DNA of 36,607 bases. Source: Macrostomum lignano. Lineage: Eukaryota. The position numbers and the translations under genes were made by a program. The stretch is from positions 1-36,607 of the forward strand of contig NIVC01004735.1 of assembly GCA_002269645.1 (NCBI GenBank), given 5' to 3'. Positions within the stretch are counted from its first letter, which is position 1; each line of letters opens with the position of its first letter. The notes beneath the pieces were generated by a model. The model searched no databases and had not been told where the DNA came from. It was given only the letters and a program-made list of their open reading frames with translations. Positions 1-28,035 of this stretch are shown piece by piece.

Positions 1-116
1 CGCTTGTAGAAGAAAATGTCCATCATGAAGTACATAAAAAGCGTTTTATGCTACCTGCTCTCAAAGAATTCAGTTAGCTGTTTTAGAAGAAAAATTACTT
101 GGAACAACCAACTGCC

Positions 117-2539
117 ATGGAGCCAGAATTGAGAGCTGCACTAGAGGCAAAAGACGATGAAAAACTGCAGCAAACTCTGCCCGCTTATCGACTCCAATAT
201 GGAGTTGACGGTCGTGGCTACAAGTATTTCTTCAACGAAGAGCGAACTCAGCCCGTGACGCATCACGTCGTCTGCAAGACGCGAAGTTCGCAGTGCCTGA
301 AACTTCTGATTGACAAGTTCGGACCCGAGTTCGTGACCTGCAGAAACGACAGGGATGAGACCGTTGTGCATCTTATAGCTCAGCATCAGGACGACTCCTG
401 GATGGAACTGATTCCAGAACCTATTGTCCAGCAAAGCCTTAAAGTGACGGCATGGAAGGGCAGAACTGTGACTCACTATGCTGCTATGAACGATGTAAGC
501 GACTCAGTATTAAAACTACTTGTAGACAAGTGCGGAGTCAACTGTCTCAAAAGCTTGGACAATGACGGCAACACGGCCCTCCATCTTGCTGCGCAGTATC
601 AGGGTAGCGATTCGATGAAGCTAGCTAAAACAGTTCTGGGTACTGACTGCTTCCAAAGTAGATGTTTCTCGAATCGGACTGTGATTCACTATGCAGCTTC
701 CAACACCAGTAGTCACACTTCACTAAAATGGCTTGTCGTACTGTGCGGAACCGACTGTCTTAAAGCTTCTGATAAAGACGGATACACTGCCGTCCATCTC
801 GCTGCACAGTACCAGGGCATTAAGTCAATGGAGCTGATGAAGGACCGCTTGGAACTGCCTGTTTCTATCCAAGCAAAAGCTCCCAAGAGAAAACGGTGTT
901 TCATTGTGCAGCTTCAAACAGATCCAGCAATGCATCATTGAAATGGCTTGTTCAAGAATTCGGATCTGACTGTCTAACCAAATTTTGCGACAAATTCGGA
1001 AACATGCCCCTCCATTTTGTTGCAGAGTGGCAGGGAGCAGATTCGATGGAGCTGATGAAGAAGGAGCTTGGAAGCAGCTGTTTTCAACTCCAAGGCAAGT
1101 CACATAAAACATCGATACACTATGCCGCTGCTAACCGAGAAAGCAACGAATCGCTAAAATGGCTTCTCAATGAGTACGGACCCGAAAGTCTCAAAGTTCC
1201 GGACAAAGATGGAAACACGGCGGTCCATCTTGCTGCCCAAAATCAGGGCGTCGACTCAATGGAACTGATGAAGACAAAGCTCGGAGACGCCTGTTTCGAA
1301 ATAAAAGGCAAACTACGCTGGACTCCTGTTCACTTTGCAGCTACCAACCTTAGTAGCAATGCGTCACTAAAGTGGCTCGTCAAAGAATTGGGATCAGACT
1401 GTCTTGAATTGCCTGACAAGGACGGAAACACTGCCATACATCTCGCAGCTCGGTACCAGGCATCGATTCGATGAAACTGATGAAGGAAGCGCTCGAAAGG
1501 ACTGCTTTCTGTTGAAAGGCTGCTTGAACAGAACTGCAATTCACTGTGCAGCTACCAATGAAAGCAGCAACCAATCGCTAAAGTGGCTCGTAAGAGAATG
1601 CGGAGCTGAAAGTCTCACAGTTCCCGATCAAAATGGACACACGGCTGTCCATCTTGCCTCACAGTATCAAGGCACAGACTCCATAGAACTGATAAAGCAA
1701 GAGCTCGGTACGGAGTGCTTTTTACTAGAAGAAAGTTTGTTTGCTAGAACGCCAGTTCATTGTGCTGCTTTAAACAGAGTCAGTAACGCATCCTTAAAAT
1801 GGCTAGTCAAAGAGTTCGGATGTGGGTGTCTTAAAACTCCCGATAAAGACGGAGACACGCCTATCCATCTTGCCACACAGTGTCAAAGCATTGATTCACT
1901 GGAATTGATGAAAATAGAGCTCGGAATCAACTGTTTTCAGCTGAAAGGCTACTCAAATAGAATGCCAATTCATATTGCCGCTTCAAGCAGCGAGAAATTA
2001 GCATTGTTTAATTGGCTGATAAAAGAGTGTGGACCCGATTGTCTGAAGGTTCCTGAGAAAAACGGAAACACGGCTGTGCATCTTGCAGCTCAGTATCAGG
2101 GCATCGAGTCGATGAAACTGATAAAGAAAGAGCTAGGAACTGGTTGCTTCCATTTGAAGGGCAGATTGATGCGGACCCCCGTTCATTGCGCCGCTTGTAA
2201 CAAATTTGGCTACTCTGTGCTCAAGTGGCTTGTCCTGAAGTGCGGTCCCGACTGTGTGGCTGCTGTCGACAAAGACGGAAACACGATCATTCATCTCGCC
2301 GCAGAGCACCAGTCAGCTGACTTGTTTCAGTTTCTAGTGGATCAAATTGGACCTCAAGTACTCTCTCTGAAGAACAACAAAGGAGAAACACTAGTAGAAT
2401 GTGTGGAGAAGGACTCGGATAATGATCGTAAAGCAAGAAAGCGAAGCTGGATCGAACTTTCAAAGGATTTTGAGTCTTTTTATCTCGAGGAGGGAGCTGT
2501 TTCTGTGAATGCAGAAGCTACGGATGATTTGTTAAACCA
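117..2539 (+). CDS. Ankyrin-repeat module 1 (about 20 ANK repeats plus cap), a large exon of a probable ANK-ANK-kinase gene; frame broken by three 1-bp deletions
   Basis: ORFs 99-941, 896-1474 and 1404-2543 carry consecutive TxxHxAA...LkWLv...G.dcL...dk.G repeats. Adding one G at each of 851/852, 1459/1460 and 1495 gives one continuous frame. ATG at 117 is in a GCCATGG context. The exon ends CA|GTAAGT (donor at 2540, phase 2). Confidence 0.85.
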
Positions 2540-2898
2540 GTAAGTTTCAGGCTCTTCACAATTTGAGTTGCGGGTTAAATTACCTGCTGCGTATGTAGCT
2601 CGTACTGAAGTATTTTAATTTGATGTTTAAGAAAAGCTTTAAAAATGTCTGTTGCTGCACTGTGAAGAGCTTGTACTCGTAATTATATAATTCCAATGCT
2701 CCAACGAATATAGCCTACCCTATAAAATATAAAAACCATAATTTTTTAATGAATGCATTGAATGGTAAAAGTCGAGGGATGAAGCAATTTAATTTGATGC
2801 TTATCTGCTAATAGCTTATTTTTGTAGTTATCTGTAAAAAATGTGTGTACCAAAGTGTTGCAATATAAAGTATACAAACAAACTGATTCAATTTTCAG

Positions 2899-4140
2899 AC
2901 TGCGTACAGCTTTGGAAGCCCGTGACGATGCGCTTCTGCGGCGACTCTGCTTGCTTCTTAACTCTAACGTTGAACTAACGGTCAATGATTGTCTCAACAA
3001 GGATCGAACTCAGTCTGTGACTCATCACGTCGTCTGTAAGTCGCGAAGTTTGCAGTGCCTGAAGCTTCTGATATCCAAATTCGGACCCGACTGTCTGTTA
3101 AACAGAAACAATCGAGGTGAAACCGCGGTGCATTTGATTGCTATGCACCAGGAAAACCTGTGGATGAAACTAATTCTAGAAGCTCTTGGCCGTGACTGCT
3201 TCAAGGACACAGCATCTAACGGTCGAATGGTGACTCACTATGCTGCTACGAATGAGACAAGTAACTCATCGCTAAAGTGGCTTGTTGCCGAGTTTGGACG
3301 CGACTGTCTCTTAGTACCCGATAAAGAAGGAAGCACAGTCGTTCATCTTGCCGCAGAGTATCAAGGTGTCGACTCCATGGAACTGATGAACAGAGAGCTC
3401 GAAACCGACTGCTTCAAAGAGTTAAAAGGATCCCAGAATCGAACGGTAGTTCACTATGCCGCCGGAAACAATATTAGCGATGCACCGCTTCGTTGGCTGG
3501 TGAAAAAGTTTGGACCAAGCTGTATCAAATTTCCAGATAAACATGGTGTCACGCCTATCCATCTAGTTACATTAAACTCCAGAAGCACGAGTAGTATGAC
3601 GCTTAATTGGCTAGTTTCTGTCGGCGGCCCGGACTGTCTCACTATTCCTGACAATGAGGGAAACACACCTGTCCATCTCGCTGCAGAGTTTCACAACATC
3701 GAATCCATGAAATTCATAAAGAAAATACTCGGACCAGAATGCTTTAGAAGAATTGGTTTTTGGCAAAGAACACCAATTCACTGCGCTGCCGCAAACAGTA
3801 ACTGCAGTGCCCTGCTTGGATGGCTCATAAAAGAATGCGGACACGACTGTCTGATGTGTCAGGACAAAGACGGAAACACGCCTGTCCATCGCGCTGCATG
3901 CTTTCAGCCAGTTAAATCATTGAAGTTGCTGGCTGACCAAATCGGGCCCGAAATTTTCTCGCTTAAGAACGCTTCTGGAAAAACAATAGCCGATTTTGTA
4001 AACCAGGACTTAGATGAAGACCGAAAACTACAAAAGCAGAGTTGGATCTCGAGCCAACTGACGCCAGAGAGACAACTAAACCTGAGGCATCCGGAAGTCA
4101 GAATGACGGCATCGGTAGAATCCTTGGGTGGCTCAAGTGG
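2899..4140 (+). CDS. Ankyrin-repeat module 2 (about 9 ANK repeats plus cap), internal phase 2-2 exon
   Basis: Acceptor TTTTCAG|A at 2898/2899 and donor TGG|GTAAGC at 4140/4141. N-cap LRTALEARDD...VTHHVVCKSRSLQCLKLLISKFGP and C-cap DQIGPEIFSLKN..G.T..D.V..D.D.DRK..K.SWI align with both ends of module 1. Confidence 0.85.
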
Positions 4141-4445
4141 GTAAGCAACTGCAGCATATTTGTAGCATATTTGTAGCATATTAGAAATCTATTACCGATC
4201 ATCTTTGGGGAGCAGCTCGCGGTAAACGTGTCTGAGTCTTGGGGTTGTCCAACAATTCATTCCCATATAGTCCGACCCCTTTGAGGCACAGAGAGTGTAC
4301 GTGCCTGACCATTCGAGATGGTACATCCTGTGTGATGTTTGTTATGTTTTGTTATGACTTGCATGTACTGCATCCTGTGACTAGCCATCAAGTTCCCCAC
4401 TGCATTTAAAACTGTGTCCATTCATTTCACTCTGGAAACAAGCAG

Positions 4446-5437
4446 CAGAGCTGGCGGAAAACCATTTCGCGAGAAATGGGAAAATAAGCAGCTTCTCGGC
4501 AGGGGCGGTTTCGGCGACGTCCACAAAGTGCTCACCGACACGGGCGTCACGTGCGCTGCAAAAACTCTCAGACTGCCATTGCAGCTCGGAGATCAACTGG
4601 ACTCTAAGGCTAGAAAGGTTGACTCAGTTGTTGAGAGCGAGAGAAACCTGTGCCAACTGCAGCATCCCAACATCGTCAGGTTCTTGTACATCACTCAGCC
4701 GGAGCCTGCAACAGTCGTTGTCTTTATGGAGCTGCTGGACGGCCACACTTTAGAGAATTTCATCGACGAGAAGCCGATAGATGAAGAGAAAATTCGACAC
4801 TTTAGCAAGCAAGTGAGTTCATTTGAATTTGTCTCGAGTGCACTTCTGAAATATAGTACATATACTTACTTCAGTTGGAAAGCAGAAGTCCTGAAGTTCT
4901 CTCAGAATTTCACTGACCAACCGCTCTTAGATCTGCAGCGCGCTGCTCTACCTGCACAGCCAGCAGCCGCCCGTGATCCACAGAGACATCAACTGCACCA
5001 ACATGATTGTCCTTGCCGACGGAACTGATCGACTTAAGCTGATCGACTTCGGCCTGTCAATCAAGCTGGAGCAGTCAGTCAGCCACATCTCAGCCTCCAC
5101 TTCGCCAAAGGGCACTCTAAACTTCATGGCGCCAGAGCTGCTCGGAGATGGTGAGTCGGAAAGCGTGCAGTACAGCAGAGAGTCGGACATCTGGGCGTTC
5201 GGCTGCTCGGTCTACCAGATGGCCATCGGAGCGAGGCCCTTTGCCACCGCCAAGAACTTGCTTCAATTGGTTCGCCTGCTAGACCAAAACGGAGCCCCGC
5301 TACTGCAGACGGGGCAGCAGAGCTGCTCACAAGAGCTGCTAGATTTCTATTCCCTGTGCACCGCTAAAGATCGCAAAGCCAGAATATCGGCAGAGGCACT
5401 GATGAAGCACAAATTTTTGACTCGTTCCTGTGACTAA
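4446..5437 (+). CDS. Ser/Thr protein kinase domain (MAP3K/STE-like) in two exons, about 4446-4812 and 4931-5437
   Basis: Motifs LGRGGFGDVH, CAAK, alphaC Glu (ESERNL), LQHPNIVRF, HRDINCTN, DFG, GTLNFMAPE, SDIWAFGC, RISAEALMKHKFL. Intron 4813-4930 (CAA|GTGAGT...CTGAC...CTCTTAG|ATC, phase 0) joins FSKQ to ICSALLYLHSQQPPVIHRD. The acceptor could be at 4442, 4445 or 4448, all phase 2. Confidence 0.9.
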
Positions 5438-5856
5438 ATCTAATTATAGCTAAGTTAAGAAGCTTATAAAACATGCATGTTTTGACTGGCTCGAGAGCAC
5501 TACGGTTAGAGAAAGTGCTGAACGTTGGTGGCATAAGCAACAGCCATCACAACAAGAGTGCCACTCATTATATTATGATTAAGTGATTAAAATTACTAAA
5601 ATTATTGTTGTTAGAGCAATGTTTTATTCAATTTAGGCTTACTAAAATAGGTATGTACATAAAATGCGCACTTGTGTTAGTGCACGCTTGCATGAAGCTT
5701 ACCCTACCTTGTTTATGCCATTTTATCCATAAATTTCTTGCTATCAAACCCTTTTTAAATTGCATCTTTTAAAGTGAATTCTAGACCAAAAAAGTTTTTG
5801 TCCAGTTTTGTACAATTTTAAGTGTTCTCAAGTTTTTAGTCTAAGGAAACTTTCTA

Positions 5857-6475
5857 GCGCCCCTGGTGCTGGCGCCCCTGGTGCTGGCGCCCTTGGTGCT
5901 GGCGCCCCTGGTACTGGCGCCCCTGGTGCTGGCGCCCCTGGTGCTGGCACTCCTGGTGCTGGCGCCCCTGGTGCTGGCGCCCCTGGTGCTGGCGCCCCTG
6001 GTGTTGGCGCCCCTGGTGCTGGCACCCCTGGTGCTGGCGCCCCTGGTGCTGGCGCCCCTGGTGCTGGCGCCCCTGGTGCTGGCACCCCTGGTGCTGGCGC
6101 CCCTGGTGCTGGCGCCCCTGGTGTTGGCGCCCCTGGTGCTAAAGCCCCTGGTGCTAAAGCCCCTGGTGCTAAAGCCCCTGGTGCTAAAGCCCCTGGTGCT
6201 AAAGCCCCTGGTGCTAAAGCCCCTGGTGCTAAAGCCCCTGGTGCTAAAGCCCCTGGTGCTAAAGCCCCTGGTGCTAAAGCCCCTGGTGCTAAAGCCCCTG
6301 GTGTTGGCGCCCCTGGTGCTAAAGCCCCTGGTGCTAAAGCCCCTGGTGCTAAAGCCCCTGGTGCTAAAGCCCCTGGTGCTAAAGCCCTGGTGCTAAAGCC
6401 CCTGGTGCTAAAGCCCCTGGTGCTGGCGCCCCTGGTGTTGGCGCCCCTGGTGCTAAAGCCCCTGGTGCTAAAGCC
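5857..6475. repeat. 15-bp minisatellite GCCCCTGGTGCT(GGC/AAA), about 41 units
   Basis: Directly visible tandem units; GGC variant dominates the left half and AAA variant the right half. Confidence 0.95.
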
Positions 6476-6924
6476 GGGACCATGAGATTTCTCTACCGCA
6501 CATTGCATAGCATGAATTACATGCTGATGCATGCACGCTGGGAGTTGCGATACTTTTTTCTATTACTTTATCTAAATAAACAATGTCAAAGATTTATCAA
6601 CTATTCTTGTTTTTCAAACGGAGGTACCATGTGTATGCTGAACCTCACGCTCTCAGTTTGACCTTTGAGTAAGTATAAAATACTAAAAACAACAGATTAA
6701 AAATGATATTCAACTTTGGACATTAGTCGCACGAATTAAAACAAATGAAATGATTTGTGCTGTTTACAATTATTGAATCACCAAAGAATGAAAGGCCTCC
6801 AGGGTTGTCTGTTCATATTTCAAAGTTCAAAGAACTTTTGAAGTTAACTGTGCCCACAGGGCGCACGCACGCGCCTCGCATCGTACAGTTCGTCTCAAGG
6901 CTTCACGCAGTCTTGCTCAGGAAC

Positions 6925-7790
6925 CACCAGCTCGAAACGTCACCAGCTCGAAACGTCACCAGCTCGAAACTTCACCAACTCGAAACTTCACCAGCTCGAA
7001 ACTTCACCAACTCGAAACTTCACCAGATCGAAACTTCACCAGATCGAAGGTTCACAAGCTCGAAGCTTCACAAGCTCGAAAGTTCACAAGCTCGAACCTT
7101 CACAAGCTCGAAGCTTCACAAGCTCGAAAGTTCACAAGCTCGAAGCTTCACAAGCTCAAAAGTTCACAAGCTCGAAGCTTCACAAGCTCGAAAGTTCACA
7201 AGCTCGAACCTTCACAAGCTCGAAGCTTCACAAGCTCGAAGCTTCACAAGCTCGAAAGTTCACAAGCTCGAACCTTCACAAGCTCGAAGCTTCACAAGCT
7301 CGAAAGTTCACAAGCTCGAAGCTTCACAAGCTCGAAAGTTCACAAGCTCGAAGCTTCACAAGCTCGAAGCTTCACAAGCTCGAAGCTTCACAAGCTCGAA
7401 AGTTCACAAGCTCGAACCTTCACAAGCTCGAAGCTTCACAAGCTCGAAAGTTCACAAGCTCGAAGCTTCACAAGCTCGAAAGTTCACAAGCTCGAACCTT
7501 CACAAGCTCGAAGCTTCACAAGCTCGAAAGTTCACAAGCTCGAACCTTCACAAGCTCGAACCTTCACAAGCTTGAAGCTTCACAAGCTCGAAAGTTCACA
7601 AGCTCGAAGCTTCACAAGCTCGAAAGTTCACAAGCTCGAAGCTTCACAAGCTCGAAAGTTCACAAGCTCGAACCTTCACAAGCTCGAAGCTTCACAAGCT
7701 CGAAAGTTCACAAGCTCGAACCTTCACAAGCTCGAAGCTTCACAAGCTCGAAAGTTCACAAGCTCGAAGCTTCACAAGCTCGAACCTTCA
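6925..7790. repeat. 16-bp minisatellite TTCACAAGCTCGAA(GC/AG/CC), about 54 units
   Basis: Direct tandem units; more diverged (G/T)TCACCAGCTCGAAAC units at the left edge. Confidence 0.95.
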
Positions 7791-9870: not shown

Positions 9871-12800
9871 ATGGAGTCGATGTACACCAGCTTCAAGGAG
9901 TGGCACGACCGGACCATGTCCCTCGGAGACCCCCGGCTCGACGGCTGGTTCCTGATGGACTCGCCCGTGCCTTCAACGCTCCTGTCGATTCTCTACGTCG
10001 TGCTGGTGCTAGCTGGTATGCGCTGGATGAAGGGTCGGACTCCCTTTGACCTCCGGCCGCTCATGGTGGTGTACAACCTGTCTATGGTGGTGTTCTCCGC
10101 CTGGCTGGTGTACGAGTTCTGCGTGTCCGGATGGCTGACCGGCTACAGTCTGGGCTGTCAGCCAGTTGACTTCAGCCGGTCGCCGAAAGCAATCCGCATG
10201 GCCAAGACTTGCTGGTGGTTTTATTTCAGCAAGTTCATTGAGATGTTAGACACGTTCTTCTTTGTACTTCGAGGCCGATTCGAACTTGTGACGTTTCTGC
10301 ACGTTTTTCACCACGCGGTGCTGCCGCCTGCCTGGTGGTGGGGCGTCAAGTTCGTTCCAGGTGAGACTTTGAGTAAAACTTTCGCTTTTGAAAACTTATT
10401 TACGCTACATATCGGCTCCAACTAATTTTTGGTAATAATCTAATGACCTCTAAAAGTGATAGTGATACGATTTTTGCCCTTGAACTCTGTTCTCAAAAAG
10501 TGTGCGCCAGCAAGTTAAGGAGTGGTCTGATTGCTAATTATAAGTTCTTCCTCCTCTGTCTTATCAGTTGGGTTTCCTTTCCTCTGTCTATAAAGAATTT
10601 GCTTGTGTCACACTTGGCAGCAGTTTTTTAAACGAACCGAAGATATGTCCAGATCTGGTTGGGCGACAGGGCAGGCTGACAGAAGACAGACAGCAGGCGA
10701 TTCTTAAATCATTTGTTTGTGAAGTTGATTGATAATCCAGGCTGACTAAATAAAGAGAATTTCTATTTAGCCACTGCCACAGTCGGCCATAGACAATAAA
10801 GCCATAGACAATAGACTATGGACATAGACAAAAGACCATAGACAATTTCAAAGTTAGAAATCGTTTTCGTTTAGTGCTGAAAACAAATCTGGAACTTTCT
10901 ATTTTGTTAATAAAATTTGCAGTGACCTTCATTTGCCCATTACTCTGCTTTTCTGTTGGAATTTCAGAAGCGCAGACGTAAAACCAGTTTTTTAGTCGAA
11001 TTGGCTTGGCAAGAGCGGAGAGGTCGAACTCTAGAAATGCGAAACTCATCGTTTCTATTGTTCGAACTAGTTAGTTTCTTCTCCAAGAGTTTTTTGTTTC
11101 ATTTTTCTTATTCAGCTCAGTCGTCTTTCTCTCCTCTCTGTCTTCTTATTTGCACTGTTTTCGGTTTGTTCACAAGCGCTTCAAGTTTTGTGTGAGCGTC
11201 TGTAGAATTCTTAGAATTTTAACGTTCGCTCGTATAGTTACACAAGCCCAATAGTTTAAATCGCAGTGAAATTTGTTATAAATCTATCGCAATTAAATCT
11301 ATCGTAAACAACCTTATTTCTAACAAATATTTATATTAAATCAACGGAAGTAAGCGTAACATGCAAACGTTGTATTAACTCCAACAACAGCGCCAGAGTT
11401 TCCATTCCGATCTTCTTCAAACAAAGATAAAGTTATAGTTTAAAGCAAGCTGAACAAATGAACGCATTAACATTGTTAAGAGACTTTTTTGTAATATCTA
11501 GCTCTCCAGTTCTGGGGGGGGGGCCTGAGTGCACACCACCCCGTCGCTTGTCCAACTGGAATTCTCTTGCCCCAGCGCGCCCAGAACTCGCTATTGTTTC
11601 AATTTGTCAATTTGTTTGAAGTTTGCGCTCACTCGCTTGCGTGCCCGCCAGCCTGCCCGGCCCCGCCCGGTAAACTCGCAGGCAGTCATGGACAATTCAA
11701 GCTGGCTATCTGGATTGGAAATTGAGCGGTGATCATAGCTGGTGTTTTTTTCTTCACAGTATGCTAATTTTTAGAAAATGAGCACTGCTCATCTTTATGC
11801 AACCAGCCCGACCCTGGGCGCAACGTAAGCATTGTGATTCATAAATAGATGTCACAGAGGAATTATTTACCTTGCGTAGCAACAAGCAGTAACCGAGCAA
11901 AACACTTTATGTCCAGATCTGGTTGGGCGACAGATCTGGTTGGGCTGGCTGGAGACAGACAGGAGGCGATTCTTTAATCATTTGTTTGTGAAGTTGATTG
12001 ATAACCCAAGCTAACAAAGTAAAGAGAATTTCTATTTAGCCACTGCCACAGTAGTCGGCCATAGACAATAAAGCCATAGAAAATAGACTATGCACATAGA
12101 CAAAAGACCATAGACAAAAAAGTCAATCAAGATCAAGCGACAGCTCGTAAGCTGTGCTCTCCCACAAAAGGCAAGCCAAGCCAGCTGTAAAAGGGCCCTG
12201 TTCTCAGGTTAAAATAATATCAAGCAGAGAATTACAAAGCCATTCTGCTCATCTTGGTGCAACCAGCCCGACCCTGGGCGCAACATAAACATTGTGATTC
12301 ATAAATAGATGTCACAGGGGAATTATTTACCTTGGTTAGCAATAATCAGTAACTAAGCAAACGCGTTATCACCTCTCCATTTTAAAACCAGGTGGTTTCG
12401 GAAGCTTCGCAGCCATGCTGAACTCTGTGGTGCACACGGTGATGTACCTGTACTATGGCCTGGCCGCCATGGGCCCCAGCGTGCAGCCCTACCTGTGGTG
12501 GAAGCGGTACCTCACCAAATTCCAGATGGTGCAATTCGTCACCATGGTGGTGCACGGAATGCAGCTGTACTTTATCGAGTGCAACTATCCGAAGGCGTTT
12601 GCCAACGCTATCATGTGCTTCGCTTGCATCTTCTTTGTGCTGTTTGCCAACTTCTATATTCAGGTGAGTCGGTTGAAGTGCTTTTTGCGTTCAACAACTT
12701 AATGCTGACAAATTGGCTTTAGCTAGTAACTAGCAATCTATAGTGCGGCCCAGGGGCGTAGCCAGAAGGGGGGCAAGGGGGCCGCGGCCCCCCCCCCAAT

Positions 12801-15067
12801 CACCAACTCTGGCCTTTGGCGCCCCCCCCCCAGAACTGCGCTTTGTCGCCCATTTGAAAATGCTGCCGCTTTTCTGGCGCCCCCCCATAAATAAACTGCT
12901 CCCCCCCTAAAAAAACTGCCCCCCCCCTATAAGAAACTGGCGCCCCCCCCCTATAGAAACTGGCGCCCCCCTAAAAGAAACTGGCGCCCCCCCCCCCCTA
13001 TAGAAACTGGCGCCCCCCCCCCCTATAGAAACTGGCGCCCCCCCCCTATAAGAAACCGCCGCCCCCCCTATAGAAACTGGCGCCCCCCCCTATAAGAAAC
13101 CGCCGCCCCCCTATAAGAAACTGGCGCCCCCCCCCCCTATAGAAACTGGCGCCCCCCTAAAAGAAACTGGCGCCCCCCCCCCTATAGAAACTGGCGCCCC
13201 CCCCTATAAGAAACCGCCGCCCCCCCTATAGAAACTGGCGCCCCCCCCCTATAAGAAACCGCCGCCCCCCCTATAGAAACTGGCGCCCCCCCCCTATAAG
13301 AAACCGCCGCCCCCCCTATAAGAAACTGGCGCCCCCCCCCTATAGAAACTGGCGCCCCCCCTAAAAGAAACTGGCGCCCCCCCCCTATAGAAACTGGCGC
13401 CCCCCCTAAAAGAAACTGGCGCCCCCCCCCCCTATAGAAACTGGCGCCCCCCCTAAAAGAAACTGGCGCCCCCCCCCTATAAGAAACCGCCGCCCCCCCT
13501 ATAGAAACTGGCGCCCCCCTAAAAGAAACTGGCGCCCCCCCCCCTATAAGAAACCGCCGCCCCCCTATAGAAACTGGCGCCCCCCTAAAAGAAACTGGCG
13601 CCCCCCTTTATAAGAAACTGGCGCCCCCTAACTCACGCCCCCCTCCCAATCAATATTCCTGGCTACGCCCCTGATAGTGCCCCCATTCAGTACGCCCAAT
13701 AATCAAAGAGCAAAAATTATTCATGTAAATCAATTAAAAAAGCACATTTCCTTAAGAACCGATTCCTTCTTCAGTTTTATAAATCACCTTATTCGAATAA
13801 ACTTGTCACGGGCAAAGATGTTTGCTATGAATCTCTGTTTTCTATGAGTAACAAAGGAAATAAGGATAACCGAAATTCCACCCTAAATAGAAAACATCCC
13901 CAAGACAGCAAGCATCCCCCAGATAGCAAGCATCCCCAAGACAGCAAGCATCCCCCCAGATGGCAAGTACACCCCCAAATACAATAGCAAGCACACCCCC
14001 AAATACAATAGCAAGCACACCTCCAAATACAATAGCAAGCACACCTCCAAATACAATAGCAAGCACACCTCCAAATACAATAGCAAGCACACCCCAAATA
14101 CAATAGCAAGCACACCCCAAATACAATAGCAAGCACACCCCCAAATATAATAGCAAGCACACCCCCAAATACAATAAATAGCAAGCACACCCCCAAATAC
14201 ATTAGCAAGCACACCCCCAAATACATTAGCAAGCACACCCCCAAATACAATAGCAAGCACACCCCCAAATATAATAGCAAGCACACCCCCAAATATAATA
14301 GCAAGCACACCCCAAATACAATAAATAGCAAGCACACCCCCAAATACAATAGCAAGCACACCTCCAAATACAATAGCAAGCACACCCCAAATACAATAGC
14401 AAGCACACCCCCAAATACAATAGCAAGCACCCCCAAATACAATAGCAAGCACACCCCCAAATATAATAGCAAGCACACCCCAAATACAATAAATAGCAAG
14501 CACACCCCAAATACAATAGCAAGCACACCCCCAAATGCAATAGCAAGCACACCCCCAAATACAATAAATAGCAAGCACACCCCCAAATACATTAGCAAGC
14601 ACACCCCAAATACATTAGCAAGCACACCCCCAAATACATTAGCAAGCACACCCCCAAATATCGTGCGATTCGCAGAGTTTGAGGCCGTTGAGGGCCAATC
14701 CCCCATGGCACAGAGGAGTGCTCAGTGCATGTACAGGAGTCACCGGAATAAACAGAATTCTTATCCTACGCATCGTGTCTGTTTGTCTCAGCTGACTCTC
14801 AATTTCAGTCTAGGCTCATCTATGTCACTTTCTTTGCTTCTGGACCTTCTCAGAATCCGGTACCTGTCCCCCCCCCAACTCCCGCAGTCCTACCTCAAGC
14901 GCTCCGGTAGGCGAGGTGCCAAAACGCAGGAGGCCAATGGACACAAGTCTGCCGTTCCGGTTGCCAATGGTAACGGCAAGAGCAACGGGCTGGCGAGTCA
15001 CCACGAGAATGGCAACAGCAGCAGCAACGGCTACCACGGGGTGAAGCGGAGTCGCAAAGCCGATTAA
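9871..15067 (+). CDS. ELOVL: Very-long-chain fatty acid elongase, ELOVL1/7-like, copy 1 (exons 9871-10360, 12392-12663, 14888-15067; 313 aa)
   Basis: GNS1/SUR4 motifs DPRLDGWFLMDSP, KFIEMLDT, FLHVFHH, LNSVVHTVMYLYY, TKFQMVQF; C-terminal RKAD resembles an ER di-basic signal. Splice sites CCAG|GTGAGA and ACCAG|GT (phase 1), CAG|GTGAGT and CGCAG|TCC (phase 0) keep the frame. Confidence 0.93.
10644..12369. repeat. Intra-intronic segmental duplication: A 10644-10845 / A' 11908-12117 and B 11785-11910 / B' 12245-12369
   Basis: Shared strings TATGTCCAGATCTGGTTGGGCGACAG...AAGAGAATTTCTATTTAGCCACTGCCACAGT...CCATAGACAA, and CTGCTCATCTT..TGCAACCAGCCCGACCCTGGGCGCAAC...GATTCATAAATAGATGTCACAG. Confidence 0.9.
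12751..13673. mobile_element. Non-autonomous DNA transposon (MITE), 923 bp, with 15-bp TIRs and an internal minisatellite of about 21-25 bp
   Basis: CAGGGGCGTAGCCAG (12751-12765) and its exact reverse complement CTGGCTACGCCCCTG (13659-13673). Interior about 12895-13629 is (TATA(A)GAAACTGGCGC(C)n) repeats. No coding capacity; the TSD is not clean. Confidence 0.8.
13893..14660. repeat. 24-bp minisatellite CAATAGCAAGCACACCCCCAAATA, about 30 units, in ELOVL copy 1 intron 2
   Basis: Direct tandem units with indel variants; shorter AGCAAGCATCCCC units at the left edge. Confidence 0.95.
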
Positions 15068-17723: not shown

Positions 17724-19851
17724 ATGGAGTCGATGTACCGCAGCTTGAAGGACTGGCACGACCAGGCCATGTCCCTCGGAGACCCCCGGCTCGACGGCTG
17801 GCTCCTGATGGACTCGCCCGTGCCGCCTGCGCTGCTGTCGATTCTCTACGTCGTGCTGGTGCTGGCTGGTATGCGCTGGATGAAGGGTCGGAATCCATTT
17901 GACATCCGACCGCTCATGGTGGTGTACAACCTGTCCATGGTGGTGTTCTCCGCTTGGCTGGTGTACGAGTTCTGCGTGTCCGGATGGCTGACCGGCTACA
18001 GTCTGGGCTGTCAGCCTGTTGACTTCAGCCGGTCGCCGAAAGCAATCCGCATGGCCAAGGCGTGCTGGTGGTTCTTCTTCAGCAAGTACATCGAGATGTT
18101 AGACACGTTCTTCTTTGTACTTCGAGGCCGATTCGAACTTGTGACGTTTCTGCACGTTTTTCACCACGCGGTCGTTCCGCCTTCGGCCTGGTGGGGAGTC
18201 AAGTTCGTTCCAGGTGAGATGGAGGAGATATTATAGTCTATTTTAGTGGCCAAACATGGAGACATGCAGTTGTTAATCCAACCGAATGGCGTTCTCGATT
18301 TTCCGTCGCAACGGACGAAACGTCCTCCAACGAGGACTTTGATCATTTACATTTTGCACGGTTTTTACGGTTTACAAATTTACCCTTGAGAGTTAGCAGA
18401 ATCTACAATGCTGCACTCTGAACTTTGGAACCAATGCAGAAAAAGTTCGAGGCACACTGTGCATGCAAACTTAGCGTACAATATTAAGAAGGGCGTTGAA
18501 CGCTCTGTCTCCATGCTCAGTGGACCGTCCATTTTTATATTATTTTTTTATTAGAGGCAGGGGGTTGCGTGCACCCTGGCGCACTTTAAGCGACATAGGC
18601 ACACAACCGGCGAGAGGCATTACTGCCCATTCCGCCGACTCCCCTGAGCAGGCATACAAGCGCGCGGATACGTACGCAGGCACACACTCACACAGGAGTG
18701 TACAGCGGCCCTAACTTTATATTATCGTTAGGCATGTACACTTCACTGCGCCTTGGGGGGTTGGCTCTCAAGGCCGTTAATTGCACGAGCAGAGCCAAGC
18801 CGAGATTCCAATTCAGCCCCAAATTAATGTGACTGCACTTGGAATCGAGCCTCGGTCGCTGGCACACCAGAGCCTGCGCTAGACCGCTGGGCTACGGCCC
18901 CCCGGCCCAGTGGACCGTCCATACAAACGCGTACTTTAATAGGCCAGTTTTCGTGTTACTTGCATGTACTACTATGCCTTTGTTTGCTAGCTACACCCTG
19001 CGATGAACAATAGGTTTTGCGAATTAAATGTAGATTTGCAGTAATATTTTGGAGCTTTTGCTCCAAAACGCCTTAATTAAAGTAAATAACTAACACATAA
19101 GCTACACTACAGATATCACAGTTATCCAAACGAATTTTGTGTTTATTTTCAGGTGGTTTCAGCACCTTCGCTACTATGCTCAATTCAGTGGTGCATGTTG
19201 TAATGTACCTGTACTATGGCCTGGCCGCCATGGGACCCAGCGTGCAGCCCTACTTGTGGTGGAAGCGGTACCTCACCAAATTCCAGATGGTGCAATTCGT
19301 CACCATAGTTATTCACGGAATGCAGCTGTATTTTATCGAATGCGATTATCCTAAGGCTTTTGCCAACGCTATCATGACTTTGGCGTGTATCTTCTTTGTG
19401 CTGTTTGCCAACTTCTATATTCAGGTGCGACCATCGTAATAGATATTTAGCTTTAACACCAGGGGCTTTAGCACCAGGGGCTTTAGCACCAGGGCTTTAG
19501 CACCAGGGGCTTTAGCACCAGGGCTTTAGCACCAGGGCTTTAGCACCAGGGCTTTAGCACCAGGGCTTTAGCACCAGGGCTTTAGCACCAGGGTCTTTAG
19601 CACTAGGGGCGCCAGCACTAGGATCGATATTTTATTTACCTTTGAACGTCAGAATTAGACAAATAAAAAGTTACAAAAACCCCCAAACCACACTGCAGGC
19701 CTATCTCAAGCGCTCTGGAGGCAGGCGCTCAGTCCAGAAGAAGCAGTCTGCTCATCAAACGGTGCTGGTTGCCAATGGTCACAGTAATGGAAGAAATGGA
19801 GCCGCTCATAACGGACATCACGAGGCAGCGCATGGTCGAAAAACCGATTAA
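17724..19851 (+). CDS. ELOVL: Very-long-chain fatty acid elongase, ELOVL1/7-like, copy 2 (exons 17724-18213, 19153-19424, 19699-19851; 304 aa)
   Basis: Same motifs, same exon 1 and exon 2 lengths (490 and 272 nt) and same phases as copy 1. Sites CCAG|GTGAGA, TTTTCAG|GT, CAG|GTGCGA, CTGCAG|GCC; ends HGRKTD*. Confidence 0.93.
18533..18907 (-). mobile_element. tRNA-derived SINE, about 375 bp, in ELOVL copy 2 intron 1
   Basis: Perfect 15-bp direct repeat CAGTGGACCGTCCAT at 18518-18532 and 18908-18922. Minus-strand head GGGGCCGTAGCCCAGCGGTCTAGCGC...GAGGCTCGATTCC has A-box TAGCCCAGCGG (18894-18884) and B-box GGCTCGATTCC (18851-18841). A-rich tail at about 18533-18552. Confidence 0.88.
19451..19621. 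repeat. 14/15-bp minisatellite TTTAGCACCAGGG(G)C, the reverse complement of the 5857-6475 family, in ELOVL copy 2 intron 2
   Basis: TTTAGCACCAGGGGC is the reverse complement of GCCCCTGGTGCTAAA; the array ends with GGGGCGCCAGCAC, the GGC variant. Confidence 0.93.
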
Positions 19852-22743: not shown

Positions 22744-25700
22744 TTATGGATTTCGGTTTCGCTGGTCTCTGGGCTGCTTCTGATCAGCAAAGCGAACCCG
22801 ACGCTGCTGGGCATCGCTGTCTGCCTTCTGCGATGCCGTGGAGGAGTCTGGTGACGCTGTGGGAGACGACGGAGCGACAAAATGCTCGATCACCATGGGA
22901 ACAGTCATGATGATGCACAGCACCTGCGGATGGGGTATCGGCTTTTGTAGATTTTAATATCCTACCAGTGTCTTTTCATCACTTTCATAGCCTACCTGTA
23001 AGACGATAAGCACTATGTACTGAACTACCATCAGGGGTTTGAGTATTTGTGGCAGCTGCAGAATGTCCATACAGTTCTGGAATAAAATATCAATATTGGA
23101 TAGCGGAACTGATGACGAGCCTGAAGAGCATTGCTGGGGGAATCAGGAGAATCTTGCTGGGGGAATCAGGCGAATCTTTCTGGGGAATCTGGAGAATCAT
23201 GCTGGGGAATCTGGAGAATAATGCTGGGGAATCTGGAGAATCATGCTGGGGAATCTGAAGAATCATGTTGGGGGAATCTGGAGAATCATGCTGGGGAATC
23301 TGGAGAATCATGCTGGGGAATCAGGAGAATCTTGCTGGGGAATCTGGAGAATCTTGCTGGGGAATCTGGAGAATCTTGCTGGGGAATCTGAAGAATCATG
23401 TTGGGGGAATCTGGAGAATCATGCTGGGGAATCTGGAGAATCATGCTGGGGAATCAGGAGAATCTTGCTGGGGAATCTGGAGAATCTTGCTGGGGAATCT
23501 GGAGAATCTTGCTGGGGAATCTGGAGAATCTTGCTGGGGAATCTGGAGAATCTTGCTGGGGAATCTGGAGAATCTTGCTGGGGAATCTGGAGAATCATAC
23601 TGGGGAATCTGGAGAATCATGTTGGCGAATCTGGAGAATCATGTTGGGGAATCTGGAGAATCTTGCTGTGGAATCTGGAGAATCATGCTGGGGAATCTGG
23701 AGAATCATTCTGGGGAATCTGGAGAATCATGCTGGGAAATCTGGAGAATCATGCTGGGGAATCTGGAGAATCATGCTGGGGAATCTGGAGAATCATGCTG
23801 GGGAATCTGGAGAATCATGTTGGAAATCTAAAGAATCATGCTGGGGAATCTGGAGAATCAGGCTGGGGAATCTGGAGAATCATTCTGGGGAATCTGGAGA
23901 ATCATGCTGGGGAATCTAAAGAATCAGGCTGGGGAATCTGGAGAATCATACTGGGGAATCTGGAGAATCATGCTGGGGGAATCTGGAGAATCATGTTAGG
24001 GAATCTGGAGAGAGCTGGGAAATATTTTTCTAAAAAAGCCGATAAGGTTTTTGTCACCTTTGCAAAGATGTATCCCCGTTTTCGAGCTAACCTGCCGTCC
24101 CTGGCTCTGACGCACAAGTTGCGGTCAGACTTCTCAGCCAGTTGAGTACAGCAGGACAAGGGGTAAACAATTTTACGCATCAGATTTGTTGCTGAGGCGT
24201 TTAATTGAGCAGAGTTCGCCTCTCGCGTCCACGGAGTGTTGAAGAACACATTTTGGTCCGGGTCATCGCTCCAGCCGCAGCAGGAATGCTGCAATAAGAA
24301 ATGCTTGCTTGCGGGTGAATTGGACAGGAATGTCTGTAGTTAAAGGACAGGAATTTCTGTAGTTAAAGGACAGAAATGTCTGTAGTTAAAGGACAGAAAT
24401 GTCTGTAGTTAAAGGACAGGAATTTCTGTAGTTAAAGGACAGAAATGTCTGTAGTTAAAGGACAGAAATGTCTGTAGTTAAAGGATAGGAATGTCTGTAG
24501 TTAAAGGACAGGAATTTCTGTAGTTAAAGGACAGGAATTTCTGTAGTTAAAGGACAGAAATGTCTGTAGTTAAAGGACAGAAATGTCTGTAGTTAAAGGA
24601 TAGGAATTTCTGTAGTTAAAGGACAGGAATGTCTGTAGTTAAAGGACAGTAATTTTCGTAGTTAAAGGACAGGAATGTCTGTAGTTAAAGGACAGGGAAT
24701 GTCTGTAGTTAAAGGACAGTAATTTTCGTAGTTAAAGGACAGGGAATGTCTGTAGGCAATACGGTAATATCTGTACAGAATATTCACAAAATGTCATCCC
24801 AAGCAAGCTATTTACAGTAGGCATATTGGAGCGTTAAACTGTGCATCGAACTAAGCTTACATCCACTTGAAATGCATTTATTGATTGAGTAATGGAAATG
24901 CTTTCGTTGCTGCTTGAGTTGCCATAGTGACTCTCGATTGTTTTCTTGATTTGCGCCGCCGAAATCAGATGGTTGCCGGCCGGTACGCTGTTGACAAATA
25001 ATAGAATCACCGACACCAGGCAGAGAGTGAGGGAGCCAACCAAGGACACTGCGTACTGATCTCACGATGGGTGCGGTGTAGGGGGTGAGGTCAGGGTGAG
25101 GTTGTATCGCTTATCTCACTCAGAATTGACTCTAATCTCACCATAGACAGACTCTAATCTAACCCTAGAGTGACTCTAATCTTTTTTCCTCCTAGTATAT
25201 TTTTTCAAATTTGATTTCTGAATTGACTCTAATATTCAACCACACTGATTCTAATCCTCACCCTAGAATGACTCCAATCTCTCTCTAGACTGACAATAAA
25301 TCTCACCCTTAGACCTAAAATAATTCTAATCTCGACTTAGATCTAGAATAACTTAAATCTCATCCTAGACTGACGCTAATCTCACCTTAGACCTAGAATT
25401 ATTCTAATCTCATCTTAAATCTAGAATGATTCTAATCTTACCTTAGCTCTAGAATGACTCTAATCTCACCATAGATCTAGCTAGAATGACTCTAATCTCA
25501 CCCTAGAACTAGCTAGAAGGACTCTAATCTCACCCTAGACCTAGCTAGAATGACTCTAATCTTACCCTAGAACTAGCTAGAATGACTCTAATCTCACCCT
25601 AGACCTAGCTAGAATGACTCTAATCTTACCCTAGAACTAGCTAGAAGGACTCTAATCTCACCCTAGACCTAGCTAGAATGACTCTAATCTCACCCTAGAC

Positions 25701-27200: not shown

Positions 27201-27611
27201 ACTTTGCTATGACTAAATTTTACATGTAGTGTGTAGTGTAAGTCTCCCAAAATTTGTCACATAAGAGCTATTGTTTAACCAAAATACCTCAATGGAGTGT
27301 TCAGTAGCCGCTCGAATGTCTATGGCTAAGAGTGCGCTCTGCATTTAATTTCTTATGATGATTTTGCAAAGCACTTCAGAATCCTGTTCAAATATTTAAT
27401 GTATTATGATGTATGATGATTTCTGGCTAAATTATAGGGAGGTCTATGGGATTCATAGTTAAAGCAAATCATTAGCTGAAAAGTTATATATTAAAGTACA
27501 AAGTTAAATTTGTCATAAAATGTAAACAAGATGTGGCTGCTAAAAATATCGAGACATTAAATTTTAGTTACGGGCTGGGCGGCACTTCTCTCACTTCAAC
27601 TGATTAAGACA

Positions 27612-27668
<57 letters not shown>

Positions 27669-27671
27669 GTC

Positions 27672-27758
<87 letters not shown>

Positions 27759-27771
27759 TCGACAGACAGAA

Positions 27772-27820
<49 letters not shown>

Positions 27821-27823
27821 GTC

Positions 27824-27902
<79 letters not shown>

Positions 27903-27915
27903 TCGACAGACAGAA

Positions 27916-28014
<99 letters not shown>

Positions 28015-28035
28015 TAGACAGACAGATAGACAGGC

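What the first reader, a model, noticed from the sequence alone, without database searches (positions are those of the whole stretch)
117..5437. Probable single gene: two capped ankyrin solenoids spliced onto a MAP3K-like kinase
Seen: both apparent ANK stop codons (TAA at 2541 and 4142) lie inside canonical donors, CA|GTAAGT (2540) and GG|GTAAGC (4141). Both donors are phase 2 and match phase-2 acceptors at 2899 and 4443/4446/4449, giving about 1,510 aa with about 30 ANK repeats and a C-terminal kinase. Known: N-terminal ANK plus C-terminal kinase occurs in TNNI3K, ILK, RNase L and plant ANK-Raf kinases, with far fewer repeats. Inference: a lineage-specific sensor-kinase whose large, rapidly varying repeat array may act as a recognition platform, possibly in immunity or stress signalling.
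Basis: partly seen in the sequence, partly recalled or inferred. Interest (0 to 1): 0.75.

Follow-up and report, generated by a model that had tools for sequence, protein, structure and literature searches.

The report
Flatworm ankyrin-repeat kinase gene, already annotated
The region is one four-exon gene of the flatworm Macrostomum lignano that joins two long ankyrin-repeat arrays to a protein kinase.

Summary
The window is the whole contig NIVC01004735.1 of Macrostomum lignano assembly Mlig_3_7. All predicted splice sites are real. The deposited protein PAA46701.1 (BOX15_Mlig014711g3, 915 aa) equals join(1908..2539, 2899..4140, 4446..4812, 4931..5437). That annotation comes from RNA-seq transcript assembly. 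Neither the second ankyrin exon nor the kinase exon has an in-frame ATG. Intron positions and phases are conserved in a paralogue that is 44% identical.

There is a caveat. On this contig the first ankyrin exon is broken by five single-base indels (172, 213/214, 845/846, 1458/1459, 1494/1495). The 1,513-codon frame therefore exists only after repair. A 98.75%-identical duplicate locus is intact at those five sites. The indels cluster in the first 1.5 kb at the contig end, so I read them as probable assembly errors (about 0.65) rather than pseudogenisation.

The kinase keeps every catalytic residue. It scores equally against STE kinases (MAP3K2, PAK, MST) and WNK, so "MAP3K-like" is not specifically supported. 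Named relatives at 38% identity or more are all M. lignano. Paralogues fuse the same modules to caspases, which hints at cell-death or stress signalling but does not prove it.

Verdict: gene structure correct, function unknown, modest novelty.

The parts
117..2539 (+). Exon 1. It holds the start codon (ATG 117, MEPELRAALEAKDD...) and ankyrin array 1 (20-21 repeats with N- and C-terminal caps). It ends in phase 2. On this contig it is broken by five single-base indels.
   Evidence: ORFs in three frames. Repaired translation. Ank_2 1.2e-66. An in-frame TAG at 84-86 lies upstream of the ATG. The duplicate locus L002 and P0001/P0002 read through.
172..214 (+). Compensated indel pair: an extra A at 172 and a missing G between 213 and 214. 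The window reads TLPAYRLQYGVDGR where the duplicate reads LCPLIDSNMELTVG.
   Evidence: alignment. P0001/P0002 and the ANK2 paralogous segment (LCLLLNSNVELTVN) show that the duplicate's frame is the ancestral one.
845..846 (+). Missing G relative to the duplicate. The frame shifts from 0 to 2 (KD|LGTACF).
   Evidence: P0001/P0002 read KDALGTACF.
1458..1495 (+). Two missing G bases, after 1458 and after 1494. The frame shifts from 2 to 1 and then from 1 to 0.
   Evidence: P0001, P0002 and P0121 read YQGIDSMKLMKEALGKDCF.
1908..1910 (+). ATG used as the start of the deposited CDS (PAA46701.1, 915 aa). It is the first Met of the longest uninterrupted frame, not the likely biological start.
2540..2898 (+). 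Intron 1 (359 nt, GTAAGT...TTTTCAG, phase 2, 31% GC). It contains the apparent TAA stop at 2541.
   Evidence: P0003 reads DDLLNQ|LRTALEA.
2899..4140 (+). Exon 2. Ankyrin array 2 (9-10 repeats, capped), 1,242 nt, symmetric phase 2-2. The frame is open upstream only from 2828 and has no in-frame ATG there.
   Evidence: In the AlphaFold2 model, 10-residue-block mean pLDDT is mostly 76-93 over residues 1-390 (one block at 62), followed by a disordered linker.
4141..4445 (+). Intron 2 (305 nt, GTAAGC...CAG, phase 2). It contains the apparent TAA stop at 4142. A triple tandem acceptor allows exon starts at 4443, 4446 or 4449, and the annotation uses 4446.
   Evidence: P0003 reads GGSSG|RAGGKPF.
4446..4812 (+). 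Exon 3. Short linker plus the kinase N-lobe (GRGGFGDV glycine loop, AAK beta-3 lysine, alpha-C Glu). The frame is open only from 4381 and has no in-frame ATG.
4813..4930 (+). Intron 3 (118 nt, GTGAGT...CTTAG, phase 0), lying between FSKQ and ICSALL.
   Evidence: The same position and phase occur in P0004 (twice) and in P0205.
4931..5437 (+). Exon 4. Kinase C-lobe (HRDINCTN, DFG, S/T-rich activation loop, APE) and the TAA stop at 5435-5437.
5586..5591 (+). ATTAAA, a candidate polyadenylation signal 150 nt after the stop codon. None of the three introns contains AATAAA or ATTAAA.
   Evidence: motif scan only.

Best explanation
Window 117-5437 (+) is one protein-coding gene of Macrostomum lignano (transcript cluster Mlig014711, copy g3).

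Gene structure.
- It has four exons joined by three GT-AG introns of phases 2, 2 and 0.
- The intact product is about 1,513 aa.
- Its layout is a capped array of about 20 ankyrin repeats, a linker of about 40 aa, a second capped array of about 10 repeats that is a paralogue of the first, a disordered linker of about 40 aa, and a C-terminal Ser/Thr kinase domain.
- On this contig five single-base indels in the first 1.4 kb of exon 1 break the frame. I judge these most likely to be consensus errors at the end of a PacBio contig (about 0.65). The alternative is that this copy is 5'-degraded (about 0.3).

How it probably works (inferred, not shown).
- The protein has no obvious N-terminal signal sequence or hydrophobic stretch on reading the translation (not tested with a predictor), so it is probably cytosolic.
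- The two ankyrin solenoids would bind partner proteins.
- The flexible linkers would let them present partners to the kinase, or release it.
- The kinase keeps every catalytic residue and has a Ser/Thr-rich activation loop (SVSHISASTSPKGT) that suits activation by phosphorylation.
- The same kinase type and ankyrin arrays 42-45% identical to this gene's (near-identical between the caspase- and kinase-bearing paralogues P0007 and P0008) are fused to caspase domains in M. lignano paralogues. The most likely pathway is therefore a lineage-specific stress or cell-death signalling module (about 0.3).

The gene is one member of a Macrostomum-specific family. That family appears to have been built by duplicating and recombining ankyrin exons that end in phase 2.

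The overall confidence of 0.7 is for the gene structure and domain layout together with the reading of the indels. Taken alone, the single-gene structure is about 0.9, and the functional pathway is about 0.3.
For: Shown:
- P0003 (PAA46701.1, 100% identical, contig length 36,607) equals join(1908..2539, 2899..4140, 4446..4812, 4931..5437).
- The Mlig_3_7 annotation is built from RNA-seq (STAR, StringTie, TACO). It is cut at spliced-leader and poly(A) sites by TBONE, and ORFs are called by TransDecoder (PMC5730564). No such cut falls inside this gene.
- P0001 (A0A1I8HJF1, 1,359 aa, from the other assembly) spans ANK1, ANK2 and the kinase.
- The duplicate locus L002 is 98.75% identical and intact at all five window indel sites. 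With indels resolved the frame is 1,513 codons with no internal stop.
- Eight single-base indels lie in window 1-1500, against one in 1501-5800.
- Substitutions between the two copies are 13 synonymous and 12 non-synonymous. In the frameshifted part they are 5 synonymous and 3 non-synonymous, so there is no sign of relaxed constraint.
- There is no in-frame ATG upstream of the ANK2 exon or the kinase exon, and no poly(A) hexamer in the introns.
- The spliced leader ends in ATG (PMC8629364). At 2899 or at 4443/4446/4449 that ATG gives stops within 8-14 codons.
- Paralogue P0004 has introns at the same positions and phases.
- Pfam domains. The catalytic residues K, HRD, N, DFG and APE are conserved across the family.
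- The ankyrin array 2 model is mostly confident and the linker is disordered.
- Caspase fusions occur in paralogues.
Against: - No transcript reads were examined directly. The RNA-seq support is second-hand, through the deposited annotation.
- Because the transcriptome is genome-guided, it cannot show whether the frameshifts are real.
- No independent sequence of the window-type copy exists in the collections searched. P0001, P0002 and P0121 are all of the L002 type.
- L002 carries its own single-base insertion after window position 943. Copy-specific frameshifts therefore occur away from a contig end as well.
- The kinase part of the structure model is poor.
- Nothing tests kinase activity, binding partners, expression or phenotype. 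The link to cell death rests only on domain co-occurrence in paralogues.
Confidence: 0.7

Rival explanations
1. The frameshifts are real. This copy (g3) would be a recently 5'-degraded duplicate. It could make at most the 915-aa protein from Met 1908 (the last 3 ankyrin double units of array 1, array 2 and the kinase), or it is on its way to becoming a pseudogene, while the other copies carry the function.
For: - The DV1 genome has extensive recent duplication, with 180 Mb in blocks at least 95% identical (PMC5730564). Redundant copies are therefore free to decay.
- The duplicate L002 also has a private frameshift away from a contig end.
- The ELO gene of L002 has a 1-bp deletion inside its CDS.
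- One of the five indels (845/846) is not at a homopolymer.
Against: - Five indels in 1.4 kb of CDS sit next to 2.9 kb of CDS with none.
- That density exceeds the intronic single-base indel rate between the copies, which is 6 in 3.6 kb.
- The indels lie exactly at the contig end.
- Substitutions in that stretch are still mostly synonymous (5 versus 3) and no stop codons occur within the shifted frames.
- The L002-type frameshift is absent from the other assembly's model P0002. This shows that such indels can be assembly-specific.
Confidence: 0.3
2. The three coding blocks are separate genes or cistrons: two ankyrin proteins ending at TAA 2541 and TAA 4142, and a kinase with its own 5' end. 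They might be resolved from a polycistronic precursor by spliced-leader trans-splicing, which is common in this species.
For: - About 30% of M. lignano genes are trans-spliced and about 15% lie in operons (PMC8629364).
- The acceptor TTTTCAG at 2892-2898 fits the trans-splice motif [T/C]TNCAG.
Against: - The deposited transcript-based CDS runs through both junctions.
- The TBONE pipeline cuts at spliced-leader and poly(A) peaks and made no cut here.
- ANK2 and the kinase lack any in-frame ATG, and the leader's ATG is out of frame.
- Upstream cis donors are present.
- There is no poly(A) hexamer in either intron.
- The same fused architecture and intron phases occur in paralogues.
Confidence: 0.03
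3. The locus is a single gene, but ankyrin array 2 is a cassette exon. Because exon 2 is symmetric (phase 2-2, 1,242 nt), it could be skipped, joining array 1 directly to the kinase. The triple acceptor could also give isoforms differing by 1 aa. The 1,513-aa form would then be one of several products.
For: - Skipping exon 2 keeps the frame.
- Three in-phase acceptors lie 3 nt apart.
- Family members with one array plus a kinase exist (P0009, P0010).
Against: - No isoform evidence was seen.
- Both Mlig_3_7 deposited models (P0003, P0121) include the whole exon 2 and use the 4446 acceptor. P0001 also includes the whole exon 2, whereas P0002 joins a truncated ANK2 to the kinase.
- The GenBank annotation was filtered to remove alternative forms, so their absence is uninformative.
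Confidence: 0.15

Closest known systems
Uncharacterised M. lignano paralogues: Mlig014711g1 (PAA51374.1), A0A1I8HJF1, Mlig002601g1 (P0004), Mlig020446g2 (P0009), Mlig023755g1 (P0008)
   Same: - The same architecture: an ankyrin array or arrays with the same caps and 71-aa double-repeat unit, followed by a C-terminal kinase.
- The same intron positions and phases.
- Identity of 37-99%.
   Different: - The number of arrays and repeats varies.
- P0004 carries an extra degenerate kinase-like domain between array 2 and the kinase.
- None has a described function.
Platyhelminth ANK caspases, and the M. lignano caspase with a kinase pro-domain (PMC11463336)
   Same: - M. lignano ankyrin-caspases P0007 and P0013 carry the same type of ankyrin array (42% and 39% identical to this gene).
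- The repeat units of P0007 are nearly identical to those of kinase-bearing P0008.
- The ankyrin exon also ends in phase 2.
- P0198, P0199 and P0205 combine this kinase type (41-48% identical), ankyrin repeats and a caspase in one protein.
   Different: - This gene has no caspase domain.
- The paper treats ANK caspases as mainly a feature of parasitic flatworms.
TNNI3K and ILK (animal N-terminal ankyrin plus C-terminal kinase), and plant ankyrin Raf-like kinases
   Same: The order of domains: ankyrin repeats first, then the kinase.
   Different: - From general knowledge, those have 5-10 repeats and TKL-group kinase domains, and ILK is a pseudokinase.
- Here there are about 30 repeats in two arrays.
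- The kinase scores higher on Pkinase (173.9 bits) than on PK_Tyr_Ser-Thr (121.7).
- Neither TNNI3K nor ILK is among the 60 best solved-structure matches.
- The shared architecture is best read as convergent.
WNK kinases
   Same: - Best single-sequence matches among solved structures (WNK1 8.7e-25).
- Shared motif LHSQQPPVIHRDINCTN, compared with LHTRTPPIIHRDLKCDN in WNK1 (alignment).
- A rotifer WNK1 homologue is among the best named hits outside Macrostomum.
   Different: - This kinase has the canonical beta-3 lysine (CAAKTL).
- It has glycine, not lysine, in the glycine loop (GRGGFGDV).
- The defining "with no lysine" arrangement is therefore absent.
STE-group kinases (MAP3K2, MAP3K5, PAK1, SLK, MST3/STK24)
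   Same: - The family profile scores MAP3K2 highest (158.9 bits), with PAK1, SLK, TNIK and MST close behind.
- It has the GT..FMAPE motif.
   Different: - The scores do not separate MAP3K from STE20 or from WNK.
- No orthology to any named MAP3K was found.
- Identity outside Macrostomum is only about 30-38%.
RIPK4/ANKK1 and DAPK1 (kinase followed by ankyrin repeats)
   Same: They combine a Ser/Thr kinase with an ankyrin array. From general knowledge, they are linked to inflammatory or cell-death signalling.
   Different: - The domain order is opposite.
- They have fewer repeats.
- They did not appear among the best matches.
- This is a resemblance from memory and was not tested.

Membership tests
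Ankyrin-repeat proteins (Pfam Ank clan) | Significant matches to ankyrin repeat profiles, arranged in tandem | tested here: met
   Ank_2 1.2e-66 for array 1 and 5.2e-28 for array 2. There are 29-31 repeats with a period of about 35.5 aa. The AlphaFold2 helical solenoid for array 2 has 10-residue-block mean pLDDT mostly 76-93, with one block at 62.
Eukaryotic protein kinase superfamily, predicted active | Full-length Pkinase match with a glycine loop, beta-3 Lys, alpha-C Glu, HRD, catalytic Asn, DFG and APE | tested here: met
   Pkinase 5.6e-51 over profile positions 2-263 of 263. The motifs present are GRGGFG, AAK, ESE, HRD, N147, DFG and APE. K40, N147, F163-G164 (of DFG) and P191-E192 (of APE) are invariant, and H140, R141 and D142 are at least 90% conserved; the DFG Asp and the alpha-C Glu are on neither list. 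Activity itself was not assayed.
MAP3K (STE11-like) | Kinase domain clearly closer to MAP3Ks than to other kinase families | tested here: inconclusive
   Single sequence: WNK1 90.8 bits, NEK7 88.7, PLK4 88.1, MAP3K2 86.6. Family profile: MAP3K2 158.9, WNK1 157.6, PAK1 156.7. No phylogeny was made.
MAP3K (STE11-like) | Phosphorylates a MAP2K | not testable with these tools
   This needs a biochemical assay.
WNK kinases | Catalytic lysine moved to the glycine loop (beta-2), with a non-lysine residue at the usual beta-3 position | tested here: not met
   The query has GRGGFGDV and CAAK, where WNK1 has GRGSFKTV and a beta-3 strand without the lysine (alignment). K40 is invariant in the family.
TNNI3K/ILK-type ankyrin kinases (TKL group) | Kinase domain of the TKL group, related to TNNI3K or ILK | tested here: not met
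   Neither appears among the 60 best solved-structure matches with the single sequence or the profile. Pkinase scores above PK_Tyr_Ser-Thr.
Platyhelminth ANK caspases | Caspase (Peptidase_C14) domain following an ankyrin pro-domain | tested here: not met
   There is no Peptidase_C14 match in any of the three parts. Paralogues P0007 and P0013 do have one.
M. lignano Mlig014711-type ankyrin-kinase family (defined here, not a curated family) | N-cap LR.ALEA.DD, a 71-aa double ankyrin unit with LKWLV and DCF motifs, a C-cap ending in ..SWI.., a phase-2 intron after the array, and a kinase with a phase-0 intron at Q|ICSAL | tested here: met

The most novel reading that the evidence does not exclude
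This gene may be one member of a Macrostomum-specific combinatorial repertoire.
- Long ankyrin arrays lie on exons that end in phase 2 (here, a symmetric phase 2-2 exon).
- These exons would be duplicated and shuffled onto two effector modules, a WNK/STE-like kinase and a caspase.
- The known products are ANK-kinase, ANK-caspase, kinase-ANK-caspase and ANK-kinase-caspase proteins.
- Such a repertoire would be a flatworm-specific cytosolic sensor-to-cell-death or innate-immune system. It would be analogous in logic to NLR/RIPK-caspase pathways but unrelated in ancestry, with the ankyrin solenoids as the recognition surfaces.
Probability: 0.15. Interest if true: 0.6.

Novelty: new member of a known kind. 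Interest (0 to 1): 0.3.

Why it matters
For this locus the practical result is a corrected gene model.
- The public CDS (915 aa) is truncated, because the genome-guided annotation inherited single-base indels at the contig end.
- The real product is probably about 1,513 aa, starting at ATG 117.

More broadly, M. lignano is a regeneration and stem-cell model that lacks the extrinsic apoptosis components FADD and DED caspases (PMC11463336).
- A large family that recombines ankyrin arrays, one kinase type and caspases is a plausible place to look for its replacement stress or cell-death signalling.
- That idea is cheap to test, because RNAi and transgenesis are available in this species.
- The domain combination itself (ankyrin plus kinase) is not new, and nothing here shows a function.

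Tried and rejected
- Looked for independent transcript or assembly copies of the window-type allele. The 90% clusters of P0001, P0002 and P0003 hold only the deposited M. lignano proteins. No Logan or ENA transcript-derived proteins of this gene appeared. The frameshift question could therefore not be settled.
- A literature search for Mlig014711 found nothing. A search for Macrostomum, ankyrin, kinase and expansion found only the caspase paper and a general duplication preprint.
- AlphaFold2 on ANK2 plus kinase with an 11-sequence alignment modelled the ankyrin array well but the kinase poorly (pLDDT below 50 from residue 510). It could not be used for fold comparison or for any docking inference, and no fold search was run.
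- The kinase could not be assigned to a named family from solved-structure matches, either with the single sequence or with the family profile.
- Considered introns instead of indels for the frame changes in exon 1. I rejected this because each is a single-base difference from a 98.75%-identical duplicate.
- Considered an extra upstream exon or a further ankyrin block. The 9 kb upstream in the duplicate locus holds an unrelated large secreted-type ORF and no further ankyrin block. An in-frame TAG lies 30 nt upstream of ATG 117.
- An Rfam scan of the window found nothing.

Full report
**What the window is.** A protein search with the repaired conceptual product returned a 915-aa protein at 100% identity. 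Its only contig is 36,607 bp long, the same length as the window. It is named [quoted passage not shown]. The record is NIVC01004735.1 of assembly GCA_002269645.1 (Mlig_3_7). The CDS is annotated at 1908..5437, protein PAA46701.1 / A0A267DBN9. The window is therefore a whole contig of a free-living flatworm genome. The rest of it holds two tandem ELO-family genes, many minisatellites and a terminal 118-bp satellite.

**Checking the observation.**
- The sequence shows CAG|TAAGT with the donor G at 2540, and GGG|TAAGC with the donor G at 4141. The TAA stops at 2541 and 4142 lie inside GTAAG.
- Only 1.7% of stop trinucleotides in the window lie inside GT[AG]AG, which is the cis-donor motif reported for this species in PMC8629364. 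Two of two is unlikely by chance (about 3e-4).
- Both donors are phase 2. The acceptors giving exon starts at 2899 and at 4443/4446/4449 are also phase 2.
- Translating join(1908..2539, 2899..4140, 4446..4812, 4931..5437) reproduces PAA46701.1 exactly. Using 4443 or 4449 does not.
A third intron (4813..4930, phase 0) lies inside the kinase.
- Pfam confirms ankyrin repeats in both blocks and a complete Pkinase domain.
- I count 20-21 repeats in array 1 and 9-10 in array 2.

- The first block is not one ORF. It is three overlapping ORFs in three frames (99-941, 896-1474, 1404-2543).
- Frame-by-frame translation shows ankyrin sequence continuing across single-base shifts near 846, 1460 and 1495.
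- A duplicate locus, NIVC01003447.1 (L002, gene Mlig014711g1), aligns to window 1-6467 at 98.75% identity.
- Against it the window has an extra A at 172. It lacks a G after 213, 845, 1458 and 1494.
- The duplicate has its own extra G after window position 943.
- Proteins from the other assembly (P0001, P0002) are intact at the five window sites, and P0002 is also intact at the L002 site.
- With the six indels resolved, the frame is 1,513 codons with no internal stop.
- The deposited CDSs start at the first Met after the last frameshift in each copy: 1908 here, and MPLHFVAEWQ in L002. This is what TransDecoder would do on genome-guided transcripts that inherit assembly indels (method in PMC5730564).

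**Are the frameshifts real?**
- Single-base indels between the copies number eight in window 1-1500 and one in 1501-5800.
- The intron-rich ELO region has six in 3.6 kb.
- The excess sits exactly at the contig end, where long-read consensus is weakest. Four of the five window indels are at short homopolymers.
- Substitutions in the affected stretch remain mostly synonymous (5 versus 3). For the whole CDS the counts are 13 synonymous and 12 non-synonymous, roughly dN/dS 0.3 by my estimate of sites.
- I therefore favour assembly error (about 0.65).
- However, L002's private frameshift and a 1-bp deletion in L002's ELO CDS show that copy-specific frameshifts also occur away from contig ends. The DV1 line is heavily duplicated, so real decay of this copy remains possible (about 0.3).

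**One gene or three?**
- The ANK2 frame is open only from 2828 and the kinase frame only from 4381, both without an ATG.
- None of the introns contains AATAAA or ATTAAA. ATTAAA occurs 150 nt after the final stop.
- M. lignano trans-splices a leader that ends in ATG (PMC8629364). Joined to 2899 or to 4443/4446/4449, that ATG is out of frame and gives stops within 8-14 codons.
- The annotation pipeline cuts transcripts at leader and poly(A) peaks, and it left this gene whole.
- Paralogue P0004 (44% identical, locus L003) has a phase-2 intron between its two arrays. It has a phase-2 intron 15 aa before the kinase glycine loop. It has the phase-0 intron at FSKQ|ICSALL, and the same phase-0 position in an extra degenerate kinase-like domain.
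- The single-gene reading is well supported.

**The protein.**
- Both arrays begin with the same cap (ELRAALEAKDD and QLRTALEARDD). Both end with the same cap (...DRKARKRSWI and ...DRKLQKQSWI). Array 2 is therefore a duplicate of a whole array.
- Exon 2 is 1,242 nt and symmetric (phase 2-2). Skipping it would keep the frame.
- AlphaFold2 models array 2 as a solenoid with 10-residue-block mean pLDDT mostly 76-93 (one block at 62), followed by a disordered linker. The kinase was poorly modelled with the shallow alignment.
- The kinase keeps the glycine loop, beta-3 Lys, HRD, Asn, DFG and APE. The beta-3 Lys, the Asn and most of DFG and APE are invariant and HRD is at least 90% conserved across 16 family members.

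**Which kinase?**
- The single sequence matches WNK1/3 best, with NEK7, PLK4 and MAP3K2 within 5 bits.
- A family profile puts MAP3K2, WNK1 and PAK1 within 2.2 bits of one another, with SLK within 5 bits.
- It shares the WNK motif PP(V/I)IHRD..C.N. But it has the canonical beta-3 lysine and no glycine-loop lysine, so it fails the defining WNK feature.
- "MAP3K-like" is compatible with the data but not specifically supported. "STE/WNK-like, unclassified" is the accurate label.

**Distribution and relatives.**
- A word-indexed search found more than 40 M. lignano clusters at 52-74% identity to the kinase, and nothing above 38% elsewhere.
- A full HMMER scan of 1.84 billion representatives found many hits. 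Every hit at 38% identity or more that carries a name is M. lignano. One unnamed Logan protein (P0231, ANK plus kinase, 40%) is of unknown origin.
- Paralogues recombine the modules:
  - P0007 and P0013 are ankyrin array plus caspase.
  - P0008 is a kinase with ankyrin units nearly identical to those of P0007.
  - P0198 and P0199 are kinase-ANK-caspase.
  - P0205 is ANK-kinase-caspase with the same Q|ICSAL intron.
- The ankyrin exon of P0007 also ends in phase 2.
- ANK caspases and a kinase-pro-domain caspase of M. lignano are already noted in PMC11463336. I found no description of the ankyrin-kinase family.

**Verdict.**
- The structural inference is right and is already embodied in public records, though truncated there.
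- The mechanism I commit to is a cytosolic, catalytically competent Ser/Thr kinase that is targeted or regulated by two ankyrin scaffolds, probably in a lineage-specific stress or cell-death pathway. This is an inference from domain content and paralogue architecture only.
- Novelty is modest: a new member of the known ankyrin-plus-kinase kind. The more interesting lead is the family-level shuffling of modules with caspases.

Noticed in passing
L005 3-3728 (P0007); P0008; P0198/P0199; L006 1501-9702 (P0205): M. lignano paralogues recombine three modules. P0007 and P0013 are ankyrin array plus caspase. P0008 (a kinase) and P0007 (a caspase) share nearly identical 71-aa ankyrin units. P0198 and P0199 are kinase-ANK-caspase, and P0205 is ANK-kinase-caspase. 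The ankyrin exon ends in phase 2 in the caspase gene too, and the kinase intron Q|ICSAL is conserved in P0205.
   Followed up: partly
window 2899-4140 and 4441-4449: Exon 2 is symmetric (phase 2-2, 1,242 nt), so skipping it keeps the frame. The intron 2 acceptor is a triple tandem AG (exon start at 4443, 4446 or 4449). All three are in phase, so isoforms differing by 1 aa are possible. The annotation uses 4446.
   Followed up: partly
window 80-117: gttttag|AAG at 86/87 could be an acceptor. An exon starting at 87 is in frame both with ATG 117 and with the terminal ATG of the M. lignano spliced leader. P0001 begins exactly there (KKNYLDQPTAMEPEL), but that is also the first codon after an in-frame TAG, so the coincidence is uninformative.
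   Followed up: no
L003 3001-8698 (P0004, Mlig002601g1): This two-array paralogue carries an extra, degenerate kinase-like domain (GEFGKVY...; no HRD) fused to array 2. It has the same phase-0 intron position as the true kinase, which implies an internal duplication of the kinase module followed by decay.
   Followed up: partly
window 9871-15067 and 17724-19439 (+): There are two tandem ELO-family (fatty-acid elongase, PF01151) genes with about 90% identical exons. The duplicate contig's copy has a 1-bp deletion at the position matching window 9897, inside the CDS, and a shorter annotated product (298 versus 313 aa).
   Followed up: partly
window 5857-31614: There is an unusually dense series of minisatellites, with periods of 4-56 bp and typically 10-50 copies. 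They create long spurious ORFs on both strands, for example 5808-6532, 6757-7575, 13825-14706, 23243-24145, 26187-27029 and 27596-28654.
   Followed up: no
window 31923-36607: A 118-bp satellite of 39.8 copies at 99% identity runs to the end of the contig. It probably explains why the assembly stopped there.
   Followed up: no
L002 1511-6345 (+), upstream of the duplicate locus; beyond the window's 5' end: The neighbouring upstream gene encodes a large protein with a hydrophobic, signal-peptide-like N-terminus and a long cysteine-rich repeat region (CxxCxxGxF-type). It shows what lies beyond the truncated 5' end of the window contig. It has no ankyrin repeats.
   Followed up: no
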